Positions 22,442-46,000 of a DNA stretch of 64,000 nucleotides are shown piece by piece (the stretch's first letter is position 1; each line of letters opens with the position of its first letter). The notes beneath the pieces are model-generated. The model was not told the DNA's origin, did not search any database, and was given only the letters and a program-made list of their open reading frames with translations. The translations under genes and the position numbers were made by a program. Origin of the DNA: Macrostomum lignano (taxonomy: Eukaryota); NCBI GenBank assembly GCA_002269645.1, contig NIVC01003176.1:1-64000 (forward strand), written 5' to 3'.

Positions 22442-23886
22442 TTCATTAATTTTGTTACCTGCTTTATTAATCCTTACCTATTACTGTCTGACTAAAAACT
22501 CGTTGGTTTGTTTTCGGGTCTTATTAATTAACTGCGCGCCTCTTTTGTTATTCTTAGGAGAAACTATTAAGATATGGTTACCTAGCAACGGGTGTGTTTA
22601 CCTTGGATACCGGCAGTTTTTCGGATTTTCCGTGTAGCTTAAATACTCTGCATAGCAACGGGTGTGTTTACCTTGGATACCGCTACCTATAGTGAACAGA
22701 AAATTGCTTCCTTATCTACAGCCCTACCATAACTACGCGACTTAAGTTGCCTTGGGTACCAACGACTCTTGTGTACTTTTATATTTTCAGCAAAGCTATG
22801 TACTATTAAATCAATTCAAAAGTTTGTCAATACTTGTACGATCTATTTGCAACCGTAGTAAAGCGAACACCACTATAATAAAAGTTTATATTTTCCTTTA
22901 TTCCGCTCCAATTCGGCTTGTCTAAACTACTTCAAGTAGGACTGCATGAATATGACTATTCAATTTGCTAATAAAGAATCAAATTGGCAATTGGCATTTT
23001 TTCTGCAAAAAAGCAAATAAAACTTAAAGTGCGTACTAATACGATCATTTAGCTTTGTCACCTCTTTTCCCCAAGTCTTTTAACTTCAGCAAAAAAGTTT
23101 AAATAATACTAAACAATGGGAATATCTGCCGTCTTGCGCTACATATTTTGTTGCTGCTAAAAGAAGACAAATTTTGCCTGGCCTGAAAGGCATCAATTGT
23201 TTGACTTTGTTTTCGTGTTTTCTTTAATAAAACTGACCTAACGAAACATGCCAAGTGGACTACTCGCGAAAACCAGATGAAGCCTTCATTTATTGAGGAT
23301 TCGTCCTTGAAATGCAGATCATTTGTAATCTTGATCGCATGCTGTAAAGTGTAAACCACATTGTTGTTCAGGCATCGCGCGTCCTTCGAGTCATAAAAAT
23401 ACAGTAAGATGGCTGCTGTATGCTGTCACGTTATTTTTTGTTTACTAAGCACAGTGGCCAGTGGGTAGCTTTGGTTTCAGAATTAGCACGGCCCAAGAGT
23501 CCAAATCCAGACCAGACAATGTGCCTTAGTCACCTGATGATGCTGGCAGCCTCAGGGCAGACCACAGATATTATAGTAATCTACAGACAGACAGACAGAC
23601 ATCAAGAGAGTTGAGTGAGAATTACAGTATGCAATGGAATTCTTCGCTTCTCTCGAAGAGTCGCAGTAAATACTGGTATAAAGCCTGTTTCTTTCATTGT
23701 CAGCACGCCTCAGACAGGATTCTGTGAGCGTCTTAAGGTCGTTATTTGACGGCGAATGTACATATGAAATGTACGCAACCCTAGAGAGGGAGAGAGAGTG
23801 GGGAGGGTGTTAAATTCTGGCACTCCAATTTAAAGACTTTCTAGTGGAAAATTCCACTCCAATAGAACCTTGTGTGTCCGTTTACT

Positions 23887-24055
23887 ATTGGCTACAATAA
23901 TCACTCAACCCCAAAGCGCCACCCTCCCCTATCCCCTACTAGCGAGACCCCCTCCAACCCCCCCCCCTCTATAAATTATCGGACGAAAGCGCAGTTGAGG
24001 CTTCGCCTGCCTTCTTTTTTGACACATTTTTAAATGGAGTCAATTCTGGGTAAGT
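23887..24055 (+). promoter_or_regulatory. Promoter and first leader exon of unknown-gene copy 1
   Basis: ATTGG (reverse CCAAT) at 23887, C-rich tract, TATAAAT at 23970, GCAGTT initiator-like site, donor G|GTAAGT at 24050. The same order is conserved in copies 2 and 3. Confidence 0.7.
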
Positions 24056-24469
24056 TTAACAATTTGGTTGTTATTGTTGCTTATCTGATGATATTCTTGT
24101 TTGTGCTGTTTTGGTAATCAGTGCAGTGGCTGTAAAATTACTAATTAGTGTAGATACCCTTAAGCGAGTGCTCAACATGTACTTTTAGATCTCTTAATAC
24201 TATTACTAGTTTACTAACTTTTAACTAGCGTTTTTCAATACGTTTCACGGCGTTATCAATAGGAATTCTACGAGTATAGAAAATTTGGAGCAATATGATG
24301 GCAATTTAGATAAGCAAGCTTGACCAACTTTAACTCTTGCTCTTACAAATTATATATATGTGCATGTATTTTCTGTATAGACTAAGCACTATAGGCCTTC
24401 TAAACACTGTCGGATCGGACACTTTCTGTAATTTTATCCGTTTTTGCAGCCATGTTGATTCGACTGGAA

Positions 24470-24770
24470 AATTTCCAGGAAATTGGCGTAGAAAATTTCC
24501 AGGAAATTGCGCATCTGAAATTTCCAGGAAATTGGCGTAGAAATTATTTTATGCTTTCGAAGAAAGTGCGCATCTGAAATTTCTTGGAAATTGGCGTAGA
24601 AATTATTTTATGCTTTCGAAGAAAGTGCGCATCTGAAATTTCCTGGAAATTGGCGTATAAATTATTTTATGCTTTCAAAGAGAGTGCGCATCTGAAATTT
24701 CTTGGAAATTGGCGTAGGAATTTTTAGGCTTTTGAAGAGAGTGCGCATCTGGAATTTCCTGGAAATTTTC
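24470..24770. repeat. ~59-bp tandem repeat in intron 1 of copy 1
   Basis: Unit GAAATTGGCGTAGAAATTATTTTATGCTTTCGAAGAAAGTGCGCATCTGAAATTTC(C/T)TG. Confidence 0.9.
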
Positions 24771-25437
24771 GAGAAAAAATGATAAGAAATGACTACAATG
24801 CACTATGCAAGGTTGCACTGGTAGAGATAGGTACCCTGTAGCAAAAAGACAGTTCGTGTACACTGCCCAGTTCCAGAATTGCAAACTTTCCCAGCCTTTG
24901 CGCACTCGTATTGGCCTACAAGGCAGCGATAGACAGTCAGACAATCTCACGCCCACCCTCTGCGACAGCGTCAAACTTGAAGGTTCTGTTCTCTGAAAAA
25001 TCATGTGATGCTTTGGTAGAACTTCATAGTCCTCGTTGTACAAACTTTCATATGCTATTATACTACTTAGTTGCCTCAGCAGTAGCGTATGTACATGTAT
25101 GCAGAAATACTTTCATAACAAGCTTGAAACAACTCAATCGTTCCAACCCCGCTCCTCTTCTCCTCCGTTGTCAGGGTAAACAACCTGAAATCCCAGAGGT
25201 GATCCTCGGCTGAGCAGGCCCGGCGGTGGCGGTGCCGGTAGTCGTGCTTTTTGTGCGGAGTCTGGCAAAAGAAAACAAACACAAAACTTCTCTACTTAAC
25301 TTCCTGATGTCAGTCGAAACACAGAATCACCACAACCTGCATCGTCGCTGCTGTTCAACATCGCCTCCGTCCGGCGCCCATCAGGATGGAGGAGCCGACG
25401 GTGATTTCGAATTGCGACTATCATTGGTCAGATTTGA

Positions 25438-26064
25438 ATGCCAGATAAGATCGTTGTAGCAATCAGCAACAGCTTTAGTTTTCTAATGGAACTGAGAAAC
25501 GCACGCAACGGCGGCGGCGTACCGGCCGCTGTGCAGCGTCGAAGTTACGAGAACAATATCACCTTCTTCCAGTTCATTCTCGATAGTCAAGAGGACGGTC
25601 GTCTGGTGCCAAAGCGGCAGCAGCAACAGCGGCACGTAACTGTTTGGCACGTGTGGCATGCAGACAGTGTCGTTGTCAAGGAACCGGAGTCGGAGACATC
25701 AGGCCGGAGTTACACCGTCCGTCTGCCGAGGAAGTCTCCAGATTCGATCGGGACTGAGGCAGTCATCGAGGATGTGTTCGGCATGGCTTTTAAGATCGAA
25801 AGCTCGACGGATTACCAGCAGTTTTTGAGCAGTTACCATCGGATTGAGTGCCAGGTGACTGGAGCATCGTCGGTTCCTATCGGAGGATCGCCAAGTATTT
25901 ATAAAACACTTGTTGAAGTTGGCGACGCCGCTTCAGACCAGCTGGACGCGGTGCGCATCCGGGAGGTGCTGAATGATGTACACCTGTTCCAGTCGGGGCA
26001 GGTGGACATTGCGAGCAACGCGACAGATGGAGTGCCGTCTTCTGCGCTGTTGATTGAGTACTGA
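25438..26064 (+). CDS. Unknown 208-aa protein, tandem copy 1
   Basis: Non-repetitive, GC-richer ORF, intact in three near-identical copies and downstream of a conserved promoter and spliced leader. I do not recognise the family. The true start is uncertain (see findings). Confidence 0.72.
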   Translation: MPDKIVVAISNSFSFLMELRNARNGGGVPAAVQRRSYENNITFFQFILDSQEDGRLVPKRQQQQRHVTVWHVWHADSVVVKEPESETSGRSYTVRLPRKSPDSIGTEAVIEDVFGMAFKIESSTDYQQFLSSYHRIECQVTGASSVPIGGSPSIYKTLVEVGDAASDQLDAVRIREVLNDVHLFQSGQVDIASNATDGVPSSALLIEY

Positions 26065-27049
26065 TTGAGTACTGATCATTGTGCATTGATGACGCGCGAA
26101 TTTGACTAAGTTTCACTGAGCATACTAAATAACTAAGTAGTACTTGTTCAACATTTCTGCTCAGTTGATCGGCACCGATGCAACACCCGCTTGGTCGCTG
26201 ACTAAATACAAGTTTTAGCAAACACCTTTAAAATCTGCTTCTTTGTGTTGCGTTTAATTTCCTTTTTCTGTATGCAATAATTGTATAAAAGTCGTAGTTG
26301 TTACTGTCTATGGATCAATAGTTCGTAAATCAAATTTGATTAAGTAGTTGAGAAACAATAATTGAGTGCTTGTACGTTGACCTGATCTGAATGTGAGAGA
26401 TCACAAATGGGATAGCAAATAAATCCTGGGCTCCAGAGCAGTTTGTTGGTAAACATGACCGTTTTGGCTTCCGACTAAGAGTCCGACTGAGGTCACATTG
26501 GTTTGCCCAACGCTCCCTCCGCCCGTCCCAGCAGAGAAGATCTCTAGTGGTATCGACCGAGAGGCCCGGCGGCCCGCGCATAGTGCCGGTTGTGTCATCG
26601 GTAGAGCCCACCTTGAGAATGGGGTCACAATTGAAGATCAATAACTACATTTTGGCGCATCATTTTATCTAGATAAATTGTACTTTACATGTATAGCGCT
26701 TGATTCTCAAATAGGAATGGTGCTTGCTTGTTTATCTAATCACTCTAGCCATAGGGTTATCGACTATACCTGTCACGCTAGTCTTTTGTCTGTAACTCTG
26801 TACACTCCTTGGTTATCTGATGCTGGCAGCGGCAGGGCAGACAGAAGACAATTAAGAGAATAGAGGCAGAATTACAATATGCAATGAAATTCTGCACTTC
26901 TCCCAAAGTCGACGTCGGTCAGCGGTCGGCTACTGACATTGGTCATACGTCCGCCGACGTCGAATTTCCGTACGGGTCTCAAGGTCGTTGTCATTGACGA
27001 CGAATATGCATAGATGTACCCACCCTAGGGAGAATGCAGTCCGTTTACT

Positions 27050-27215
27050 ATTGGCTACAGCTGCTGCGATAATCACTCAACCCCCGCCACCCTTCCCCAT
27101 TCGCATACTGCCCCCAACCCCTCCCCCTCTATAAATTATCGGACGGAGGCGCTGTTGAGGCTTCACCTGCCTTCTCTTTCGACACATTTTTAAATGGAGT
27201 CAATTCTGGGTAAGT
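27050..27215 (+). promoter_or_regulatory. Promoter and first leader exon of unknown-gene copy 2
   Basis: ATTGG 27050, TATAAAT 27130, donor at 27210; homologous to copy 1. Confidence 0.7.
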
Positions 27216-28931
27216 TAAACTTTAGTTGTAATTGTTGCTTATCTATAATAATATTTTATCTGGTTTTACAAATCAATGCGGTGGTTTGTACATGTACAAT
27301 TAGTATAACCCTTAAGCGAGTTGCTTCAAATGTACATGTACTATTCATAGTATTAATATAGTACTAGGCCATTTAAAACTATTAAATATACATCTATATA
27401 CTGAGCTAAGACGAGCGGATGAGACTACTACTGGTACAAATCTCAGTCTAATAGAGCTAAGTTTAAAGGCAATAAAGGCAATTTTAAGGGCAATTTAGAT
27501 AAATTATTTGATAAGCATGCAAGCTTGATAGACGTTTACTTTATTAATTTAGCTATAGATAGACTACGTACTAGCTTATAAGCACTGTCTGATCGGACTC
27601 CAGTGTGAGCTCTTCTATGCAAAAATAATGGAATGCACCCAATAAATATATGGAAACGTTCTGGCCACAAGTAGAAACTAACGTTCCGAATTTAAATCAG
27701 GCACTTAAAACTCGCTGGTTTTAACAGCATGGAGTTAATAATTTATTATTATGACAGCTTCTGAAACTTTGCAGAAATTATAAGGCACCTTTTAACTCAG
27801 TACTGTAAACGAAAACATGGAACTAAAACTCACCGTCTAGGTTGTTCCTTGTGAGCAATGCATTTATGTAAAACCAGGAACTGCACACCCAGTTCTAATA
27901 ATAGAACCGCCCCGCAAGACTGCGAATGCTGTTGGTCAAGAACTAGGTACTGTGGGAATAAAAAGCCGATCGATCATCGCATATTTTTGTAACAAGGTAG
28001 TACCCGAAATCTATTTTAAATGCAATCTAAAATCTATTCATTTCCTGAACTCATTTATTACTGGTAGTTACGAAACTACACTAATGGCCGCAGCGAAAAA
28101 AGATTTAATCGCCACCATTGTCAAGATGACGTCGGCTCTTGACAATAAAGAAAGTTCAGTTAAAGAACGCAAACTAAACGCATGAAAGGATGAGTTTCCA
28201 CTACTACCATTACCACTCGTAGCAGAAAGACAGCTCATTTACACAGCCTAGTTGCAGTTATAGTTACTAACTTTCTCATCCTTTTCGCACTCACATATTT
28301 GGCCTATTAGGGTGTTAACGATAAGGTATAGCGGTGGACAGTCGGTGTGTCAGACAATCCAACATTCACCCTCAGCGGCAGCAAAAAACTATAGGATTTA
28401 TTTTCTCTTCACATGAAAAATCATGTGATGCTTGGTGGAACTCCGTAGTTCTCGTTTTACAAACTTTCATACTCTGGTATGTTTGTACATGTATGCAGAA
28501 ATACTTTCATAACAAGCTTGAAACAACTCAATTCTTCTTCCCCCGCTCCTCTTCTCACCCGTTTCCAGGGTAAACAACCTGAAATCCCAGAGGTGATCCT
28601 CGGCTGAGCAGGCCCGGCGGTGGCGGTGCCGGTAATCGTGCTTTTTGTGCATAGTCTGGCAAAAGAAAACAAACAGAACTTTTTACTTAACTTCCTGATG
28701 TCAATCGAACCCAAACAACAACCAAAAACTTCTCTGTGCGGTAGTTGTGCTTCTATTATTACTTCGAACAAAGCAAACGAATTGTCTACTAAACTTCCTG
28801 ATGTCAGTCGAAACACAGAATCACCACAACCTGCATCGTCGCTGCTGTTCAACATCGCCTCCGTCCGGCGCCCATCAGGATGGAGGAGCCGACGGTGATT
28901 TCGAATAGCAACTATCATTGGTCAGATTTGA

Positions 28932-29558
28932 ATGCCAGATAAGATCGTTGTAGCAATCAGCAACAGCTTTAGTTTTCTAATGGAACTGAGAAACGCACGC
29001 AACGGCGGCGGCGTACCGGCCGCTGTGCAGCGTCGAAGTTACGAGAACAATGTCACCTGGTTCCAGTTCATTCTCGATAGTCAAGAGGACGGTCGTCTGG
29101 TGCCAAAGCGGCAGCAGCAACAGCGGCACGTAACTGTTTGGCACGTGTGGCATGCAGACAGTGTCGTTGTCAAGGAACCGGAGTCGGAGACATCAGGCCG
29201 GAGTTACACCGTCCGTCTGCCGAGGAAGTCTCCAGATTCGATCGGGACTGAGGCAGTCATCGAGGATGTGTTCGGCATGGCTTTTAAGATCGAAAGCTCG
29301 ACGGATTACCAGCAGTTTTTGAGCAGTTACCATCGGATTGAGTGCCAGGTGACTGGAGCATCGTCGGTTCCTATCGGAGGATCGCCAAGTATTTATAAAA
29401 CACTTGTTGAAGTTGGCGACGCCGCTTCAGACCAGCTGGACGCGGTGCGCATCCGGGAGGTGCTGAATGATGTACACCTGTTCCAGTCGGGGCAGGTGGA
29501 CATTGCGAACAACGCGACAGATGGAGTGCCGTCTTCTGCGCTGTTGATTGAGTACTGA
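28932..29558 (+). CDS. Unknown 208-aa protein, tandem copy 2
   Basis: 4 nt differences from copy 1 (I41V, F43W, and S->N near the C-terminus). Confidence 0.72.
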   Translation: MPDKIVVAISNSFSFLMELRNARNGGGVPAAVQRRSYENNVTWFQFILDSQEDGRLVPKRQQQQRHVTVWHVWHADSVVVKEPESETSGRSYTVRLPRKSPDSIGTEAVIEDVFGMAFKIESSTDYQQFLSSYHRIECQVTGASSVPIGGSPSIYKTLVEVGDAASDQLDAVRIREVLNDVHLFQSGQVDIANNATDGVPSSALLIEY

Positions 29559-29944
29559 TTGAGTACTGATCATTGTGCATTGATGACGCGCGAATTTGAC
29601 TAAGTTTCACTGAGCATACTAAATAACTAAGTAGTACTTGTTCAACATTTCTGCTCAGTTGATCGGCACCGGTGCAACACCCGCTTGGTCGCTGACTAAA
29701 TACAAGTTTTAGCAAACACCTTTAAAATCTGCTTCTTTGTGTTGCGTTTAATTTCCTTTTTCTGTATGCAATAGTTGTACAAATATTCGTAGTTGTTACT
29801 GTCAGTGGATCAATAGTAGTTAGTAGTAAGACGGATTTCTGAAAAAGTAAAAGTATTGAAAAACATTTATTCAGTGCTTGTACGTTGACCTACCCTAGCT
29901 GAATGTGACGTATTCACAAATGAAATGACGGATCTAGCAAATAA

Positions 29945-35094: not shown

Positions 35095-35266
35095 ATTGGC
35101 TACAGAGACAGCTGCTGCGATAATCGCTCAACCCCACCGCCACCCCCTCCGCGGGAGCCCCCAACCCCTCCCTGCCCCCTCTATAATTATCGGACGAAGG
35201 CGCAGTTGAGGCTTCGCCTGCCTTCTTTTTTGACACATTTTTAAATGGAGTCAATTCTGGGTAAGT
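35095..35266 (+). promoter_or_regulatory. Promoter and first leader exon of unknown-gene copy 3
   Basis: ATTGG 35095, TATAATT 35182, donor at 35261. Confidence 0.7.
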
Positions 35267-36596
35267 TGGGTTGTAATTGTTGATTGTCTAATGTCTAATA
35301 TTATTTTGTGCTGTTTAGTTAGCTGTTTTGGTAATCAATTCAGTGGCTGTATAATTACTATAATTACTAGTCTTTATCTGCTCGTCTTAGCTTGGTATAA
35401 AGATGTTAGAGTAAAAGTCGGCCATGCTTGTTTGTCTAAATTGCTATCATATATACTTATTGCTCCAATTGTAAATAAACTTCCTATAGTATAGTATAAA
35501 ACCGTGAAAACTTGAAATACATGAAAATGCAATGCCATAATTATAATAATAAATAACTAGCCTTATTCATTCAGCTCAATCGCTGCAAGTCAGCTATAGT
35601 CTATATAAGATAGCATAGGCCTTCTAAGCACAGGCGAAACGGACTGAGCAAAAAATCCTTGAAAAGTTGTCCAACTACTACCTGTATAAACTAAAATGTA
35701 AGTGTGCTGCATTCTAATAAAATTTAATTCTAAAAGACGGTGAAGTGTGAATGTTATTTAAGTCAACTGTTCGTAATTTTTTGCGTTTATTTTGCAAAAT
35801 TGCACGCACAATAATATAAAAGTAATAATAATATTTTGCAGCCGTGTGGATTCCAAAGGAAAATTTCCTGCAAATTCCTGTAGAAATTGTTTTGGCCTTT
35901 CGGAAAAAGTACGCCTCTAAAATTTCCGGGAAACTGTTGAGAAAATGACTACAATGCACTATGCAAGGTTTCCCTGTAGAGGTATAGGTACCCTGTATAG
36001 CAAGACAACTCATGTACACTGCTGATCTGCAGTTAGTTACTTAACTTTCTCACTCTCTCTGCGAACTCGTATCGGCCTATAGGGTAGCGATGGCCATGCA
36101 GTCAGTCAGTGTAGGTCAGGGAGTCCCGCATCCACCCTAAGTGACAACGAAAAACTGTATGAGTTCTTTTTTCTTCTCATAAAAAACTCATGTGATGCTT
36201 GGAAGAACTGTGTTGTCCGTTTATACAAACCTTCATATGCTATACTACTTATTGTTGTCTCAGCAGTATATCATGTACATTATGCATAAAAACTTTTCTA
36301 ACAAGCATTAAACAACTCAATCTTTCTTCCGCCACTCCTTAACCGTTGTCAGGGTAAACAACCTGAAATCCCAGAGGTGATCCTCGGCTGAGCAGGCCCG
36401 GCGGTGGCGGTGCCGGTAGTCGTGCTTTTTGTGCGGAGTCTGGCTAAAAACTTCTCTACTTCTTTATGTCAGTCGAAACACAGAATCACCACAACCTGCA
36501 TCGTCGCTGCTGTTCAACATCGCCTCCGTCCGGCGCCCATCAGGATGGAGGAGCCGACGGTGATTTCGAATTGCGACTATCATTGGTCAGATTTGA

Positions 36597-37223
36597 ATGC
36601 CAGATAAGATCGTTGTAGCAATCAGCAACAGCTTTAGTTTTCTAATGGAACTGAAAAAGGAACGCAACGGCGGCGGCGTACCGGCCGCTGTGCAGCGTCG
36701 AAGTTACGAGAACAATGTCACCTGGTTCCAGTTCATTCTCGATAGTCAAGAGAACGGTCGTCTGGTGCCAAAGCGGCAGCAGCAACAGCGGCACGTGACT
36801 GTTTGGCACGTGTGGCATGCAGACAGTGTCGTTGTCAAGGAACCGGAGTCGGAGACATCAGGCCGGAGTTACACCGTCCGTCTGCCGAGGAAGTCTCCAG
36901 ATTCGATCGGGACTGAGGCAGTCATCGAAGATGTGTTCGGCATGGCTTTTAAGATCGAAAGCTCGACGGATTACCAGCAGTTTTTGAGCAGTTACCATCG
37001 GATTGAGTGCCAGGTGACTGGAGCATCGTCGGTTCCTATCGGAGGATCGCCAAGTATTTATAAAACACTTGTTGAAGTTGGCGACGCCGTTTCAGACCAG
37101 CTGGACGCGGTGCGCATCCGGGAGGTGCTGAATGATGTACACCTGTTCCAGTCGGGGCAGGTGGACATTGCGAACAACGCGACAGATGGAGTGCCGTCTT
37201 CTGCGCTGTTGATTGAGTACTGA
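36597..37223 (+). CDS. Unknown 208-aa protein, tandem copy 3
   Basis: 7 nt differences from copy 2 (R20K, N21K, A22E, D53N, one A->V, 2 synonymous). Confidence 0.72.
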   Translation: MPDKIVVAISNSFSFLMELKKERNGGGVPAAVQRRSYENNVTWFQFILDSQENGRLVPKRQQQQRHVTVWHVWHADSVVVKEPESETSGRSYTVRLPRKSPDSIGTEAVIEDVFGMAFKIESSTDYQQFLSSYHRIECQVTGASSVPIGGSPSIYKTLVEVGDAVSDQLDAVRIREVLNDVHLFQSGQVDIANNATDGVPSSALLIEY

Positions 37224-37679
37224 TTGAGTACTGATCATTGTGCATTGATGACGCGCGAATTTGACTAAGTTTCACTGAGCATACTAAATAGCTAAGTAGT
37301 ACTTGTTCAACATTTCTGCTCAGTTGATCGGCACCGGTGCAACACCCGCTTGGTCGCTGACTAAATACAAGTTATAACAAACATCTTTAGAACCTAGCTG
37401 CTTGTTTGTATTGCGTTTAATTTCCTTTTTCTGTATGCAATAGTTGTACAAATATTCGTAGTTGTTACTGTCTATGGATCGCTACATGTAGTTAGTAAAT
37501 CAGATTTGATTAAGTGTGGGAGCAAAAGTTTGAGCGCTTTGTACTCGTACGTTGACCTTAAATGTCTATGAGCGTCCTTATAGTACCCAAGCCTGGAAAG
37601 CAACACAGCACGGAATTCGGATCGCAAGGAACACAGAGGTGAAGCAACGGCCTCCACAAACTTCAATCCGGAGGCTCCG

Positions 37680-43008: not shown

Positions 43009-46000
43009 ATGACCAAGCGCAAGGCAGCAGCAACCGCAGCAGCAGCTGGGTTATCGCAGCCAACCCGAGCTAAAAGTGCTCGCACTGCGGCAGCTAACAA
43101 AGCATCGACTTCATCAAAATTGCCGCCGAATTTCGAATGGACTCAAGCTGGCGGATTAGCCAAGCCCGGCGTACCGCACATGTTCGTGCTGTCGTCTTCA
43201 ACCGCCGTAGCGGCGAAAAAGTGCGCCGTATTCGACATTGACTGGTGCCTCATCAAGCCCAAGTCTGGTGGAAAATGGCCAAAGAATGCCTCAGATTGGT
43301 GCTGGCTGTTTGACTCTGTGCCGGATAAGCTGAAGCAGTTGCACTCAGACGGCTATCGGCTGCTGTTCATCTCCAATCAGTCGGGCTTTGAGAAGGGCAC
43401 CACCAGTCCCAAAGAGATTATGCAGAAATGCGAATTGGTTATTAGCGAGCTGGGCGTGCCTGCTGATGTCATTCTGATTGGCTCAGTCAGTCATTTTCGT
43501 AAGCCCGACATTGGCGCCTGGGAGTTCTTCGTGAGGGACTGCAACGGCGGCGTTGAGGTGAGCGAATGCTAGTGTGGGACAGGGAGTGTGCAGGGAGTGT
43601 GTAGGGAGTGTCCCTGTCCCACACTCCCTGTCCCACACTCTCCCTGTCCCACACTCCCTGTCCCACACTCCCTGTCCTACACTCCCTGTCCCACACTCAC
43701 TGTCCCACACTCCCTGTCCCACACTCCCTGTCCTACACTCCCTGTCCTACACTCCCTGTCCCACACTCCCTGTCCCACACTCTCCCTGTCCCACACTCTC
43801 CCTGTCCCACACTCCCTGTCCCACACTCCCTGTCCCACACTCCCTGTCCTACACTCCCTGTCCCACACTCCCTGTCCCACACTCTCCCTGTCCCACACTC
43901 TCCCTGTCCCACACTCCCTGTCCCACACTCCCTGTCCCACACTCTCCCTGTCCCACACTCCCTGTCCCACACTCCCTGTCCCACACTCCCTGTCCCACAC
44001 TCCCTGTCCCACACTCCCTGTCCTACACTCCCTGTCCCACACTCCCTGTCCCACACTCTCCCTGTCCCACACTCTCCCTGTCCCACACTCCCTGTCCCAC
44101 ACTCTCCCTGTCCCACACTCCCTGTCCCACACTCTCCCTGTCCCACACTCCCTGTCCCACACTCCCTGTCCTACACTCCCTGTCCCACACTCCCTGTCCC
44201 ACACTCCCTGTCCCACACTCCCTGTCCTACACTCCCTGTCCTACACTCCCTGTCCCACACTCCCTGTCCCACACTCTCCCTGTCCCACACTCTCCCTGTC
44301 CCACACTCCCTGTCCCACACTCCCTGTCCCACACTCCCTGTCCTACACTCCCTGTCCCACACTCCCTGTCCCACACTCTCCCTGTCCCACACTCTCCCTG
44401 TCCCACACTCCCTGTCCCACACTCCCTGTCCCACACTCTCCCTGTCCCACACTCCCTGTCCCACACTCCCTGTCCCACACTCCCTGTCCCACACTCCCTG
44501 TCCCACACTCCCTGTCCTACACTCCCTGTCCCACACTCCCTGTCCCACACTCTCCCTGTCCCACACTCTCCCTGTCCCACACTCCCTGTCCCACACTCTC
44601 CCTGTCCCACACTCCCTGTCCCACACTCTCCCTGTCCCACACTCCCTGTCCCACACTCCCTGTCCTACACTCCCTGTCCTACACTCCCTGTCCCACACTC
44701 CCTGTCCCACACTCCCTGTCCTACACTCCCTGTCCTACACTCCCTGTCCCACACTCCCTGTCCCACACTCCCTGTCCTACACTCCGTCCTACACTCCCTG
44801 TCTACCGAGCAACCCCCTCTCTAAACTCGAACCCAACTCCCCCAGTTCGACAAGTCGTCCAGTTTCTTTGTCGGCGACGCGGCCGGCCGCCCAGCCAGCG
44901 GGTCGCACAAAAAGGATTTCTCCTGCTCCGACCGGATGTTCGCTGCCAACATCGGCCTGCCGTTCAGCACGCCGGAAGAATTCTTTCTAGACGAGCCGAA
45001 GTCCGAGTTCGATTGGGGCGCACCGAGTCCGCAGAGTTTGCTGGATGCGGCGGCGAGCTGCAGCCTACCGGGGGTGAGTCTGTTAATCCGGATTATCTCA
45101 ACATTAATAATGTCCCCGCCTGGAGTAACTCTAAATAAGAAATATCCCCACCTTGATTATCCCTAAATTAGAAACATCCCCACCTGGATTACCCCTACTT
45201 TAAAAATATCTCCACCTGGATTATCTCTCAATTACAAATATCCCCACCTGGATTATCCCTAAATTAAAAATATCCCCACCTCGATTATCTCTAAATTAGA
45301 AATATCCCCACCTGGATTATCCCTAAATTAAAAATATCTCCACCTGGATTATCTCTAAATTAGAAATATCCCCACCTGGATTATCCCTAAATTAGAAGTA
45401 TCCCCACCTGGATTATCTCTAAATTAGAAATATCCCCACCTGGATAATCTCTAAATTAGAAATATCCCCACCTGGATTATCTCTCAATTAGAAATATCCC
45501 CACCTGGATTATCCCTAAATTAGAAATATCTCCACCTGGATAATATCTCAATTAGAAATACCTCACCTGGATTATCTCTAAATTAGAAATATCCCCACCT
45601 GGATAATATCTAAATTAGAAATATCCCCACCTGGATTATCCCTAAATTAGAAATATCCCCATCTGGATTATCCCTAAATTAGAAATATCCCCACCTGGAT
45701 AATCTCTTAATTAGAAATACCCCACCTGGATTATCTCTAAATTAGAAATACCCCCACCTGGATTATCTGTAAATTAGAAATATCCCCACCTGGATTATCT
45801 CTAAATTAGAAATATCCCCACCTGGATTATCTCTAAATTAGAAATATCCCCACCTGGATTATATCTAAATTAGAAATATCCCCACCTGGATTATCTCTAA
45901 ATTAGCAATATCCCCACCTGGATTACCCCTACATAAATAATCGCCAATCTCCCCTACTCAATCAAGAACCTGTTGTCAAGCAAGCAACCGGAGCTGCTGC

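What the first reader, a model, noticed from the sequence alone, without database searches (positions are those of the whole stretch)
25386..25448. Conserved overlapping uORF in antizyme-like +1 frameshift geometry in all three copies
A strong-context ATG (AGGATGG at 25386/28880/36545) opens MEEPTVISN(C/S)(D/N)YHWSDLNAR*. It ends GCC AGA TAA G, overlapping the weak-context main ATG (TGAATGC). Skipping the T of TAA lands exactly in the main frame (AAG ATC GTT...), the same stop-dependent +1 arrangement used by ornithine decarboxylase antizyme. Both substitutions in copy 2 keep this frame open (one of them creates a stop in another frame). A further uORF, MESILG*, is formed across the exon 1/2 junction. 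The gene therefore looks translationally controlled by frameshifting, leaky scanning or re-initiation at M17. I see no convincing antizyme sequence motif in the main ORF.
Basis: partly seen in the sequence, partly recalled or inferred. Interest (0 to 1): 0.75.

Follow-up and report, generated by a model that had tools for sequence, protein, structure and literature searches.

The report
Overlapping uORF in ultraconserved flatworm leader
The small upstream reading frame is real, but comparison with relatives shows it is not an antizyme-style frameshift site: it is one start codon inside an unusually conserved, folded 5' leader that probably gates translation of a flatworm-specific gene of unknown function.

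Summary
All three tandem copies carry MEEPTVISN(C/S)(D/N)YHWSDLNAR*, overlapping a weak-context main ATG in the +1 phase, and MESILG* spans a real exon 1/2 junction. The three copies are recent duplicates (dS 0-0.014), so their agreement says nothing about constraint.

The window is Macrostomum lignano-like DNA. The 208-aa product belongs to a lineage-restricted family (9 proteins among 1.84 billion) with no Pfam, PDB or fold match, antizyme included.

Eight further cDNA-like homologues decide the reading. The strong-context uATG is kept and always overlaps the main ATG. Its phase is +1 in four lineages and +2 in four. Its length (20-87 codons), stop and peptide vary. The main ORF has its own conserved ATG, usually directly after an in-frame stop. 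The site AGA-UAA-G fits no known antizyme site. Frameshifting is therefore not supported.

What is conserved is RNA. Two leader blocks stay 81-100% identical while synonymous sites are saturated (dS 0.6 to >3). They fold into a long-range 15-bp helix plus a hairpin holding the uATG, with a few compensatory changes.

The most likely function is a peptide-independent overlapping uORF within a structured leader, blocking main-ORF initiation unless it is bypassed (ATF4-like reinitiation, leaky scanning or shunting).

The parts
23885..23974 (+). Putative promoter of copy 1: inverted CCAAT box (CTATTGGCTACA, 23885-23896) and TATA box (TCTATAA, 23968-23974). The same pair lies upstream of copies 2 (27048/27128) and 3 (35093/35180).
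   Evidence: Sequence and coordinates. Function is inferred from position about 60 nt upstream of the exon 1 end.
24034..24049 (+). Exon 1 part of uORF1 (ATG GAG TCA ATT CTG G|), ending at the splice donor CTGG|GTAAGT. uORF1 (MESILG*) is completed by GG TAA at 25175-25179. Copies 2 and 3 have it at 27194-27209 and 35245-35260.
   Evidence: The spliced form is seen in L006 and L007. MDPILG* occurs in the distant L013, and ..ILG*/..VLG* in the 5'-truncated L008 and L010. The stop is TAA, TAG or TGA in different lineages.
24050..25174 (+). Intron 1 in the 5' UTR (GT..AG) of copy 1. It contains tandem repeats at about 24469-24767.
   Evidence: The junction is confirmed by the homologous cDNA contigs L006 and L007.
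25197..25256 (+). Leader block A, 91-100% identical in homologues. It holds AGGUGAU (25197-25203), the 5' strand of the 15-bp helix CGGCGGUGGCGGUGC (25221-25235) and UUUGUG (25250-25255). Copies 2 and 3 start at 28591 and 36375.
25307..25459 (+). Non-conserved third-frame uORF (weak context CTGATGT, 50 codons, overlaps the main ATG). Its ATG is absent in L006, L007 and L008.
25320..25412 (+). Leader block B, 81-100% identical in homologues. It holds CACAGA (25320-25325), the 3' strand of the long helix GCAUCGUCGCUGCUG (25339-25353), AUCGCCU (25360-25366) and the hairpin CCUCCGUCC (25364-25372) x GGAUGGAGG (25384-25392), which encloses uAUG2.
25386..25448 (+). uORF2, the finding itself: MEEPTVISNCDYHWSDLNAR*. 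It has a strong context (AGGATGG) and overlaps the main ATG by 11 nt in the +1 phase. Copies 2 and 3 have it at 28880-28942 and 36545-36607.
25438..26064 (+). Main ORF of copy 1: 208 aa, a Macrostomum-restricted family with no known domain. The ATG has a weak context (TGAATGC) and is preceded by an in-frame TGA. Copy 2 is 28932-29558 and copy 3 is 36597-37223.
26114..26175 (+). Conserved 3'-UTR element: stem ACUGAGC (26115-26121) x GCUCAGU (26159-26165), followed by the invariant UGAUCGGCAC.
   Evidence: L006 carries a compensatory U-A to C-G change.

Best explanation
uORF2 is a genuine, transcribed overlapping upstream ORF whose start codon matters, not its peptide, length, stop or phase. It sits in the 3' strand of a conserved hairpin at the end of a roughly 310-nt, strongly conserved and folded 5' leader. 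That leader also carries a conserved 6-codon cap-proximal uORF1 (MxxILG*).

Ribosomes that initiate at the strong-context uAUG2 are carried past the weak-context main AUG, so the 208-aa protein is made only by ribosomes that bypass uAUG2. Three bypass routes are possible:
- delayed re-initiation after uORF1, which is the ATF4/GCN4 logic;
- leaky scanning modulated by the hairpin;
- shunting across the long helix.

No programmed +1 frameshift is involved.

Shown here: the anatomy, the transcription and splicing in homologues, the nucleotide-level conservation, the non-conserved phase, and the predicted structure with a few supporting substitutions. Inferred: that uAUG2 is used, that it represses the main ORF, and which bypass route operates.
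For: (1) The uAUG with a purine at -3 and G at +4 is present in 8 leader-sharing sequences: window copies c1-c3, L001, L003, L004, L006, L007 and L008. The distant L010 and L013 also have uORFs overlapping the main AUG.

(2) The uORF2 frame has no stop between uAUG2 and the main AUG in 8 of 8 sequences. The other two frames hold 18 stops in 16 frame-sequences.

(3) The peptide is not conserved. 1-nt indels change the frame in L006 and in L007/L008. The tail is 43-62% identical in L003-L007, which is near the CDS third-position level of 37-49%.

(4) The phase is +1 in four lineages and +2 in four. uORF2 length is 20-87 codons and the stop lies +8 to +203 from the main ATG.

(5) The weak context (TGA|ATGC) of the main AUG is conserved, with an in-frame stop directly upstream in 7 lineages. 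The N-terminal strand right after M1 is conserved and is the best-predicted part of the model.

(6) Block A of the leader is 91-100% identical and block B 81-100%, while dS is 0.64 to >3. The linker between them is only 39-44% identical in L003-L007 (79% in L001) and carries indels, which argues for selection rather than gene conversion.

(7) RNAalifold and three independent single-sequence folds recover the same 15-bp long-range helix and the uAUG2 hairpin. The z-scores are -2.9, -2.2 and -3.6. 97% of cells are paired against 32-60% when partners are slid. One-sided GU-to-GC/AU changes keep pairing, and there are 2 compensatory changes, one in the uAUG2 hairpin.

(8) The contigs L006, L008 and L010 start with an Illumina adapter followed by exon 1 sequence, and L006 ends in poly(A). 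The mature mRNA therefore contains uORF1 and uORF2 and shows no spliced leader.
Against: - There is no translation data of any kind, so use of uAUG2 is inferred.
- uAUG2 lies inside a block that is conserved as a whole, so its conservation cannot be separated from that of the RNA structure.
- Most helix columns are invariant, so covariation support is thin: 45 of 500 shuffles reach the observed score.
- The species of origin of the Logan and JGI contigs is unknown, so some may be paralogues rather than orthologues.
- No M. lignano transcript was seen directly.
- uAUG2 is only 50-59 nt from the main AUG, much closer than my recollection of the uORF2-to-CDS start spacing in ATF4 (not checked here). 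That makes a pure delayed-reinitiation switch less obvious.
Confidence: 0.6

Rival explanations
1. The AUG is incidental. The block around 25360-25412 is conserved purely as an RNA structure or binding site, for example for a regulatory protein, an IRES-like or shunt-landing element, or a switch between alternative pairings. The uORF has no role of its own.
For: Conservation extends well beyond the AUG on both sides and ignores the reading frame. All three AUG bases are paired in the predicted hairpin, which has a compensatory CG-to-UA change next to the AUG. AUCGCC can pair either with the upstream GGUGAU or, by eye, with the downstream GGYGAU (sequences), which is a possible switch.
Against: The strong Kozak context is kept, including in L008 where -2 changes. 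The U of AUG stays as a G.U wobble, although C would pair better. The uORF frame is kept stop-free up to the main AUG in all 8 sequences, despite frame-shifting indels and a fast-evolving tail.
Confidence: 0.25
2. Programmed stop-dependent +1 frameshifting at AGA-UAA-G fuses the uORF to the main frame in M. lignano, possibly as a lineage-specific innovation.
For: The geometry is correct in the window and in L001, L006 and L010. The 92 nt after the stop fold better than shuffles, with z = -2.9.
Against: - The phase is +2 in L003, L004, L007 and L008.
- In the closest homologue, L001, a one-codon insertion in the main frame removes the TAA.
- AGA is not among the known antizyme P-site codons. 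The stop is UAA followed by G, an efficient termination context. M. lignano's own antizyme uses UUU-UGA (PMC1874602).
- The usable shift window between the main-frame TGA (25435-25437) and the TAA is only 3 codons.
- The main ORF has its own conserved AUG.
- PF02100 does not match, and Foldseek finds no antizyme-like or any other significant fold.
Confidence: 0.03
3. Leader conservation is not functional at the RNA level. It would reflect concerted evolution or gene conversion among paralogues, a DNA-level element such as an enhancer, or an embedded or antisense non-coding gene.
For: The family is tandemly duplicated, with three copies in the window against two in NIVC01000732.1. Paralogues co-occur in one sample: P0005 and P0009 are both in SRR28338166. 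The species of the contigs is unverified.
Against: - Conservation is mosaic. Blocks of 81-100% identity flank a 39-44% linker with indels (L003-L007), unlike a conversion tract.
- Only P0001-type proteins come from the annotated M. lignano genome, which suggests the others are from other species.
- Substitutions in the blocks preserve pairing.
- There is no Rfam family on either strand.
- A 1-nt indel in block B excludes coding on either strand.
Confidence: 0.1

Closest known systems
ATF4/ATF5/GCN4-type delayed re-initiation leaders (short permissive uORF1 plus an inhibitory uORF overlapping the CDS out of frame)
   Same: There is a cap-proximal very short uORF1 (6 codons). A second uORF in strong context overlaps the main AUG out of frame. 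The uORF2 peptide and length are unconstrained. A stem-loop sits at the uORF2 start, and stem-loops are also reported to tune ATF4-type control (PMC11058473, PMC9971878).
   Different: uAUG2 is only 50-59 nt upstream of the main AUG, while uORF1 lies about 200 nt upstream of uAUG2. The intervening leader is an ultraconserved folded domain, which ATF4 logic does not need. The gene is an orphan protein, not a bZIP factor. Stress dependence is untested.
Pararetrovirus (CaMV/RTBV)-type ribosome shunt configuration (PMC5902531)
   Same: A 5'-proximal short uORF terminates upstream of a large elongated stem-loop. The base of that stem-loop is conserved and its apex is variable: copy 2 tolerates a 100-nt insertion in the apical linker.
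   Different: The uORF1 stop is 17 nt upstream of a weak 7-bp helix and 41 nt upstream of the 15-bp helix. The region 3' of the stem is a GC-rich hairpin with an AUG, not an unstructured UA-rich landing site. This is a cellular flatworm mRNA.
Ornithine decarboxylase antizyme +1 frameshift (PMC1874602)
   Same: A short ORF ends at a stop codon overlapping a longer ORF in the +1 frame. This holds in the window and three other lineages.
   Different: The product is not an antizyme. The shift codon (AGA) and stop (UAA-G) do not match. The downstream ORF has its own conserved AUG. The phase is not conserved. ORF1 here is 20 codons, against about 68 for mammalian antizyme 1.

Membership tests
Antizyme-type programmed +1 frameshift | The ORF2 product is an ODC antizyme (Pfam PF02100) | tested here: not met
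   hmmscan of the main product and of the hypothetical fusion found 0 families at E<=10. The profile search of PDB sequences gave no hit below E=0.84. Foldseek against PDB gave no match with E<=0.001 or TM>0.3.
Antizyme-type programmed +1 frameshift | [quoted passage not shown] | tested here: not met
   The site is AGA-UAA-G. The list of sites and the UUU-UGA site of the real M. lignano antizyme are from PMC1874602.
Antizyme-type programmed +1 frameshift | ORF2 is reachable only through ORF1, with no functional initiator of its own | tested here: not met
   The main ORF starts with an ATG conserved in all 11 sequences. An in-frame stop lies directly upstream in 7 lineages. The N-terminal residues MPxKI..VV(I/M)SN are conserved.
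Antizyme-type programmed +1 frameshift | The +1 phase of ORF1 relative to ORF2 is conserved among homologues | tested here: not met
   The uATG-to-main-ATG offset is 52, 55, 58 and 61 nt (mod 3 = 1) in the window, L001, L006 and L010. It is 59, 53, 50 and 50 nt (mod 3 = 2) in L003, L004, L007 and L008.
Antizyme-type programmed +1 frameshift | Frameshifting actually occurs and responds to polyamines | not testable with these tools
   This needs reporters or mass spectrometry.
ATF4/GCN4-type two-uORF delayed re-initiation leader | A very short, cap-proximal, re-initiation-permissive uORF1 | tested here: met
   MESILG* (6 codons) is present in copies c1-c3, L006 and L007, and MDPILG* in L013. The stop is TAA, TAG or TGA.
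ATF4/GCN4-type two-uORF delayed re-initiation leader | The last uORF overlaps the main ORF out of frame | tested here: met
   This holds in all lineages examined. uORF2 ends +8 to +203 nt past the main ATG, and its frame is stop-free in 8 of 8 sequences.
ATF4/GCN4-type two-uORF delayed re-initiation leader | Main-ORF translation is induced when eIF2-alpha is phosphorylated; the uORF1 mutant loses induction and the uORF2 mutant is derepressed | not testable with these tools
   No expression or ribosome-profiling data are available here.
CaMV-type ribosome shunt | The short uORF terminates just in front of the stable base of a large stem-loop (take-off site) | tested here: inconclusive
   The uORF1 stop (25177-25179) lies 17 nt before the predicted AGGUGAU x AUCGCCU helix, and this spacing is conserved in L006, L007 and L008. 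The main 15-bp helix starts 41 nt downstream of the stop. The structure is predicted, not probed.
CaMV-type ribosome shunt | An unstructured UA-rich landing site lies 3' of the stem | tested here: not met
   The sequence 3' of the helix is the GC-rich hairpin CCUCCGUCC..GGAUGGAGG.
Conserved-peptide uORF (CPuORF) | The uORF amino-acid sequence is conserved | tested here: not met
   The uORF2 peptides are MEEPTVIS.., MGEPTAIS.., MENRRRFL.. and MGEADGDS... Frame-shifting indels are tolerated, and the tail is 43-62% identical at the nucleotide level in L003-L007.
Known RNA families (Rfam 15), including SRP/7SL, which block A superficially resembles | Covariance-model match | tested here: not met
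   There is no hit at gathering score in the whole window. In 24900-25500 at E<=10 there is nothing except a chance ctRNA fragment.

The most novel reading that the evidence does not exclude
The roughly 310-nt leader, possibly together with the conserved 3'-UTR stem and motif, may be a previously undescribed, deeply conserved structured cis-regulatory RNA domain. It could be a translational switch or shunt/IRES-like platform with alternative pairings and perhaps 5'-3' UTR communication. It would control a Macrostomum-specific orphan gene family, with uAUG2 as its built-in gate.
Probability: 0.3. Interest if true: 0.6.

Novelty: new member of a known kind. Interest (0 to 1): 0.38.

Why it matters
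As a frameshift candidate it does not matter, because that reading fails. What remains has modest but real value. This is a cellular mRNA whose 5' leader is far more conserved than its coding sequence, near-identical where synonymous sites are saturated. It combines a tiny uORF, a long-range helix and a hairpin-embedded overlapping uORF. Macrostomum lignano is transgenic-tractable (from my own knowledge; not checked here), so this would be a convenient natural model for uORF- and structure-based translational control in flatworms. It also gives a handle on an orphan gene family that must be tightly regulated.

Tried and rejected
- **Antizyme identity.** Pfam on the main and fused products found nothing.
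- **Function of the protein.** The profile search of 1.84 billion representatives found only 9 family members. The AF2 model has pLDDT 65.5. Foldseek against PDB gave no meaningful match, with TM<0.3. PDB sequence profiles gave nothing.
- **Leader as a known RNA.** Block A superficially resembles the 7SL Alu domain, but Rfam found nothing.
- **Leader elsewhere.** Pattern scans of JGI metagenome contigs and viral contigs gave 0 hits. Even the JGI contig L003 was not recovered, so these collections are uninformative here.
- **Exact M. lignano transcripts for the three window proteins.** None is on record.
- **Coding explanation for block B.** This is excluded by a 1-nt indel in L001 and others.
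- **A 31-nt GT..AG mini-intron inside the uORF (by eye).** It would give ACG-ATT-TGA, and the homologous cDNAs are colinear with the genome, so I rejected it.
- **Spliced-leader trans-splicing removing the uATG.** Adapter-capped contigs show exon 1, not a spliced leader. This remains untested for M. lignano itself.
- **Distant long leaders.** The L010 fold is not better than shuffles, with z = -0.45. A possible equivalent long-range helix there is only an eye impression.
- **Literature.** There are no papers on Macrostomum uORFs or on Mlig025766.

Full report
**1. What is in the window**

The window is flatworm DNA. The closest database protein is the hypothetical protein BOX15_Mlig025766g2 of Macrostomum lignano, at 94% identity. 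The M. lignano contig NIVC01000732.1 (locus L002) is colinear with window 24.7-48.2 kb at 88-97% identity. It carries two copies of the gene where the window has three.

The three copies encode an intronless 208-aa ORF on the + strand, at 25438-26064, 28932-29558 and 36597-37223. Each has a short exon 1 about 1.1-1.4 kb upstream, ending ...ATGGAGTCAATTCTGG|gtaagt at 24049, 27209 and 35260. A TATA box and an inverted CCAAT box precede exon 1. Exon 2 begins cag|GGTAAAC at 25175, 28569 and 36353.

**2. Check of the observation**

- The uORF lies at 25386-25448, 28880-28942 and 36545-36607.
- It starts in AGGATGG and ends GCC AGA TAA G.
- The main ATG in TGAATGC lies 52 nt downstream of the uATG, which is the +1 phase.
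- Copy 2 carries the two substitutions, and one of them creates a TAG in the third frame.
- MESILG* spans the exon 1/2 junction.

Agreement among the three copies carries no weight, because they are very recent duplicates with dS of 0-0.014. The uORF is in fact the most variable part of copy 2: 2 differences in 63 nt against 4 in 616 nt in the rest of the CDS. Two random substitutions leave the frame open 87% of the time. Any overlapping uORF must be in one of only two phases.

**3. Homologues**

A profile search returned four more proteins (P0003-P0006) beyond P0001 and P0002. An exhaustive HMMER search of 1.84 billion representatives returned only nine family members. The family is therefore lineage-restricted.

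It has no match in any library I searched:
- no Pfam domain, for the main product or the hypothetical uORF-main fusion;
- no PDB relative by sequence;
- no fold match, using an AF2 model of pLDDT 65.5.

Each homologue sits on a 0.9-1.5 kb contig from Logan or JGI assemblies. These contigs are cDNA-like for three reasons. Several begin with an Illumina adapter followed by exon 1 sequence. L006 ends in poly(A). They contain the spliced exon 1/exon 2 junction predicted from the window. Mature transcripts therefore contain both uORFs, and no spliced leader is seen. I could not assign these runs to species.

**4. The decisive comparison**

The coding sequences are highly diverged. dS against copy 1 is 0.64 (L001), 1.03 (L003), 1.28 (L004), 1.38 (L006) and 3.2 (L007), with dN/dS of 0.2-0.45. 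Yet all of these, and L008, carry the same 5' leader.

| Region | Identity to copy 1 |
|---|---|
| Block A (AGGTGATCC...TTTGTGCG) | 91-100% |
| Linker between the blocks | 39-44% in L003-L007 (79% in L001), with indels |
| Block B (AACACAG...GGATGGRGGAGCCGAYGGNGATTYC) | 81-100% |
| uORF tail, from the end of block B to the main ATG | 43-62% in L003-L007 (86% in L001) |
| CDS third positions | 37-62% |

The uATG lies inside block B and is retained everywhere with a purine at -3 and G at +4. Everything the frameshift model needs is not retained.
- The offset to the main ATG is 52, 55, 58 and 61 nt (+1 phase) in the window, L001, L006 and L010.
- The offset is 59, 53, 50 and 50 nt (+2 phase) in L003, L004, L007 and L008.
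- uORF length is 20, 36, 35, 23, 87, 26 and 26 codons in the window, L001, L003, L004, L006, L007 and L008.
- The stop is TAA, TGA or TAG, at +8 to +203 from the main ATG.
- In the closest homologue, L001, a one-codon insertion in the main frame (P-D-K to P-E-D-K) removes the TAA.
- 1-nt indels inside the first codons change the peptide in L006 and in L007/L008.

**5. Further points against an antizyme-like site**

The main ORF has its own ATG in every sequence, with a conserved weak context. An in-frame stop lies directly upstream of it: TGA-ATG in six lineages and TAG-ATG in L006. In the window, a shift into the main frame would therefore have to occur within three codons.

The residues right after M1, (I/V)xV(I/M)SN, are conserved and form the best-predicted strand of the model. 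M17 is not conserved.

According to Ivanov and Atkins (PMC1874602):
- the stop is UGA in about 97% of cases;
- ORF2 is reached only through ORF1;
- M. lignano has a bona fide antizyme with a UUU-UGA site.

The site here is AGA-UAA-G.

**6. What is conserved: an RNA structure**

RNAalifold on seven leaders and independent single-sequence folds of copy 1, L006 and L008 (z = -2.9, -2.2, -3.6) give the same core.
- A 15-bp long-range helix joins block A to block B: CGGCGGUGGCGGUGC (25221-25235) pairs with GCAUCGUCGCUGCUG (25339-25353).
- This helix is extended by GGU/ACC and UUUGUG/CACAGA, with the variable linker as its apex. Copy 2 tolerates a 100-nt insertion there.
- Small 5' hairpins precede it.
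- A hairpin, CCUCCGUCC (25364-25372) x GGAUGGAGG (25384-25392), has uAUG2 in its 3' strand.

On eight sequences, 97% of cells are paired, against 32-60% when partners are slid by 1-3 columns. All four variable positions in the 15-bp helix keep pairing (G.U to G-C, U.G to U-A, G.U to A-U). There are two compensatory double changes, one of them (C-G to U-A) next to uAUG2 in L008.

Most columns are invariant, so covariation statistics are weak: 45 of 500 shuffles reach the observed score. No Rfam family matches. A 1-nt indel in block B rules out a coding explanation on either strand.

**7. uORF1**

MESILG* is present in the window, L006 and L007. MDPILG* is present in the distant L013, and ..ILG*/..VLG* appear in 5'-truncated contigs. 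The stop is TAA, TAG or TGA in different lineages.

Its last codons, CUGGGG, can pair with the conserved CCCAG 15 nt downstream (folds). RNA structure may therefore also explain its conservation.

**8. Mechanism**

The conserved features are:
- a tiny cap-proximal uORF;
- a folded spacer of about 200 nt;
- a strong-context AUG whose ORF always runs across a weak-context main AUG, in either alternative frame.

The uORF2 frame has no stop before the main AUG in 8 of 8 sequences, against 18 stops in the other 16 frame-sequences.

This is the signature of a peptide-independent inhibitory overlapping uORF. The architecture is closest to ATF4-type delayed re-initiation, for which stem-loops near uORF2 are also reported (PMC11058473, PMC9971878). 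The short uORF followed by an elongated stem also recalls the pararetroviral shunt configuration (PMC5902531), but the landing region does not fit.

I put 0.6 on 'start-codon-dependent gate within a structured leader'. I put 0.25 on 'pure RNA element with an incidental AUG', 0.1 on non-RNA explanations of the conservation and 0.03 on frameshifting. All functional steps are inferences, because no translation data were available.

**9. Novelty**

The finding as proposed is not supported. What remains is a new example of a known kind of control. It is attached to an unusually conserved and apparently undescribed leader; I found no literature on it.

Noticed in passing
window 26114-26175 (copy 1); 29608-29669 (copy 2); 37273-37334 (copy 3); 3' UTRs of L001, L003, L004 and L006: The 3' UTR carries a conserved stem, ACUGAGC x GCUCAGU, followed by the invariant UGAUCGGCAC, in homologues with saturated dS. 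L006 has a compensatory U-A to C-G change. It also has the same U-to-C change in the CUGAGC of 5' leader block A, which hints at 5'-3' UTR pairing or a shared partner.
   Followed up: partly
window 28655-28780 (copy 2 leader): Copy 2 has an insertion of about 100 nt in the variable apical linker of the leader. It includes a duplicated ACTTAACTTCCTGATGTCA(A/G)TCGAA, which adds an extra uATG with a 66-codon uORF. The conserved blocks are untouched.
   Followed up: partly
window 25435-25440 and the equivalent position in homologues: An in-frame stop codon directly abuts the main start codon (TGA-ATG in six lineages, TAG-ATG in L006), and the weak context is conserved. No conserved ORF ends at that stop.
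   Followed up: partly
window 24.7-37.5 kb versus L002 (M. lignano NIVC01000732.1): There is a copy-number difference: three tandem gene copies in the window against two in the colinear public contig. Overall identity of 88-97% suggests another haplotype, subgenome or assembly.
   Followed up: partly
window 24469-24767 (intron 1 of copy 1): Tandem repeats lie inside the 5'-UTR intron, seen as self-BLAST hits offset by about 50 and about 120 nt.
   Followed up: no
window about 45090-45930: An array of tandem repeats with a period of about 32 nt, judged from BLAST offsets against L002. It lies in the strongly C-skewed 44-50 kb region, which is colinear with the L002 gene carrying the PNK3P and AAA_33 domains.
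   Followed up: no
L010/L011 and L012-L015 (distant homologues P0008 and P0009): The more distant family members have much longer leaders (640-720 nt) with 12 uATGs each. They still keep the uORF1-like start (..ILG*) and an ORF overlapping the main ATG. P0005 and P0009 occur in the same sample, so at least two paralogous leader types coexist.
   Followed up: partly
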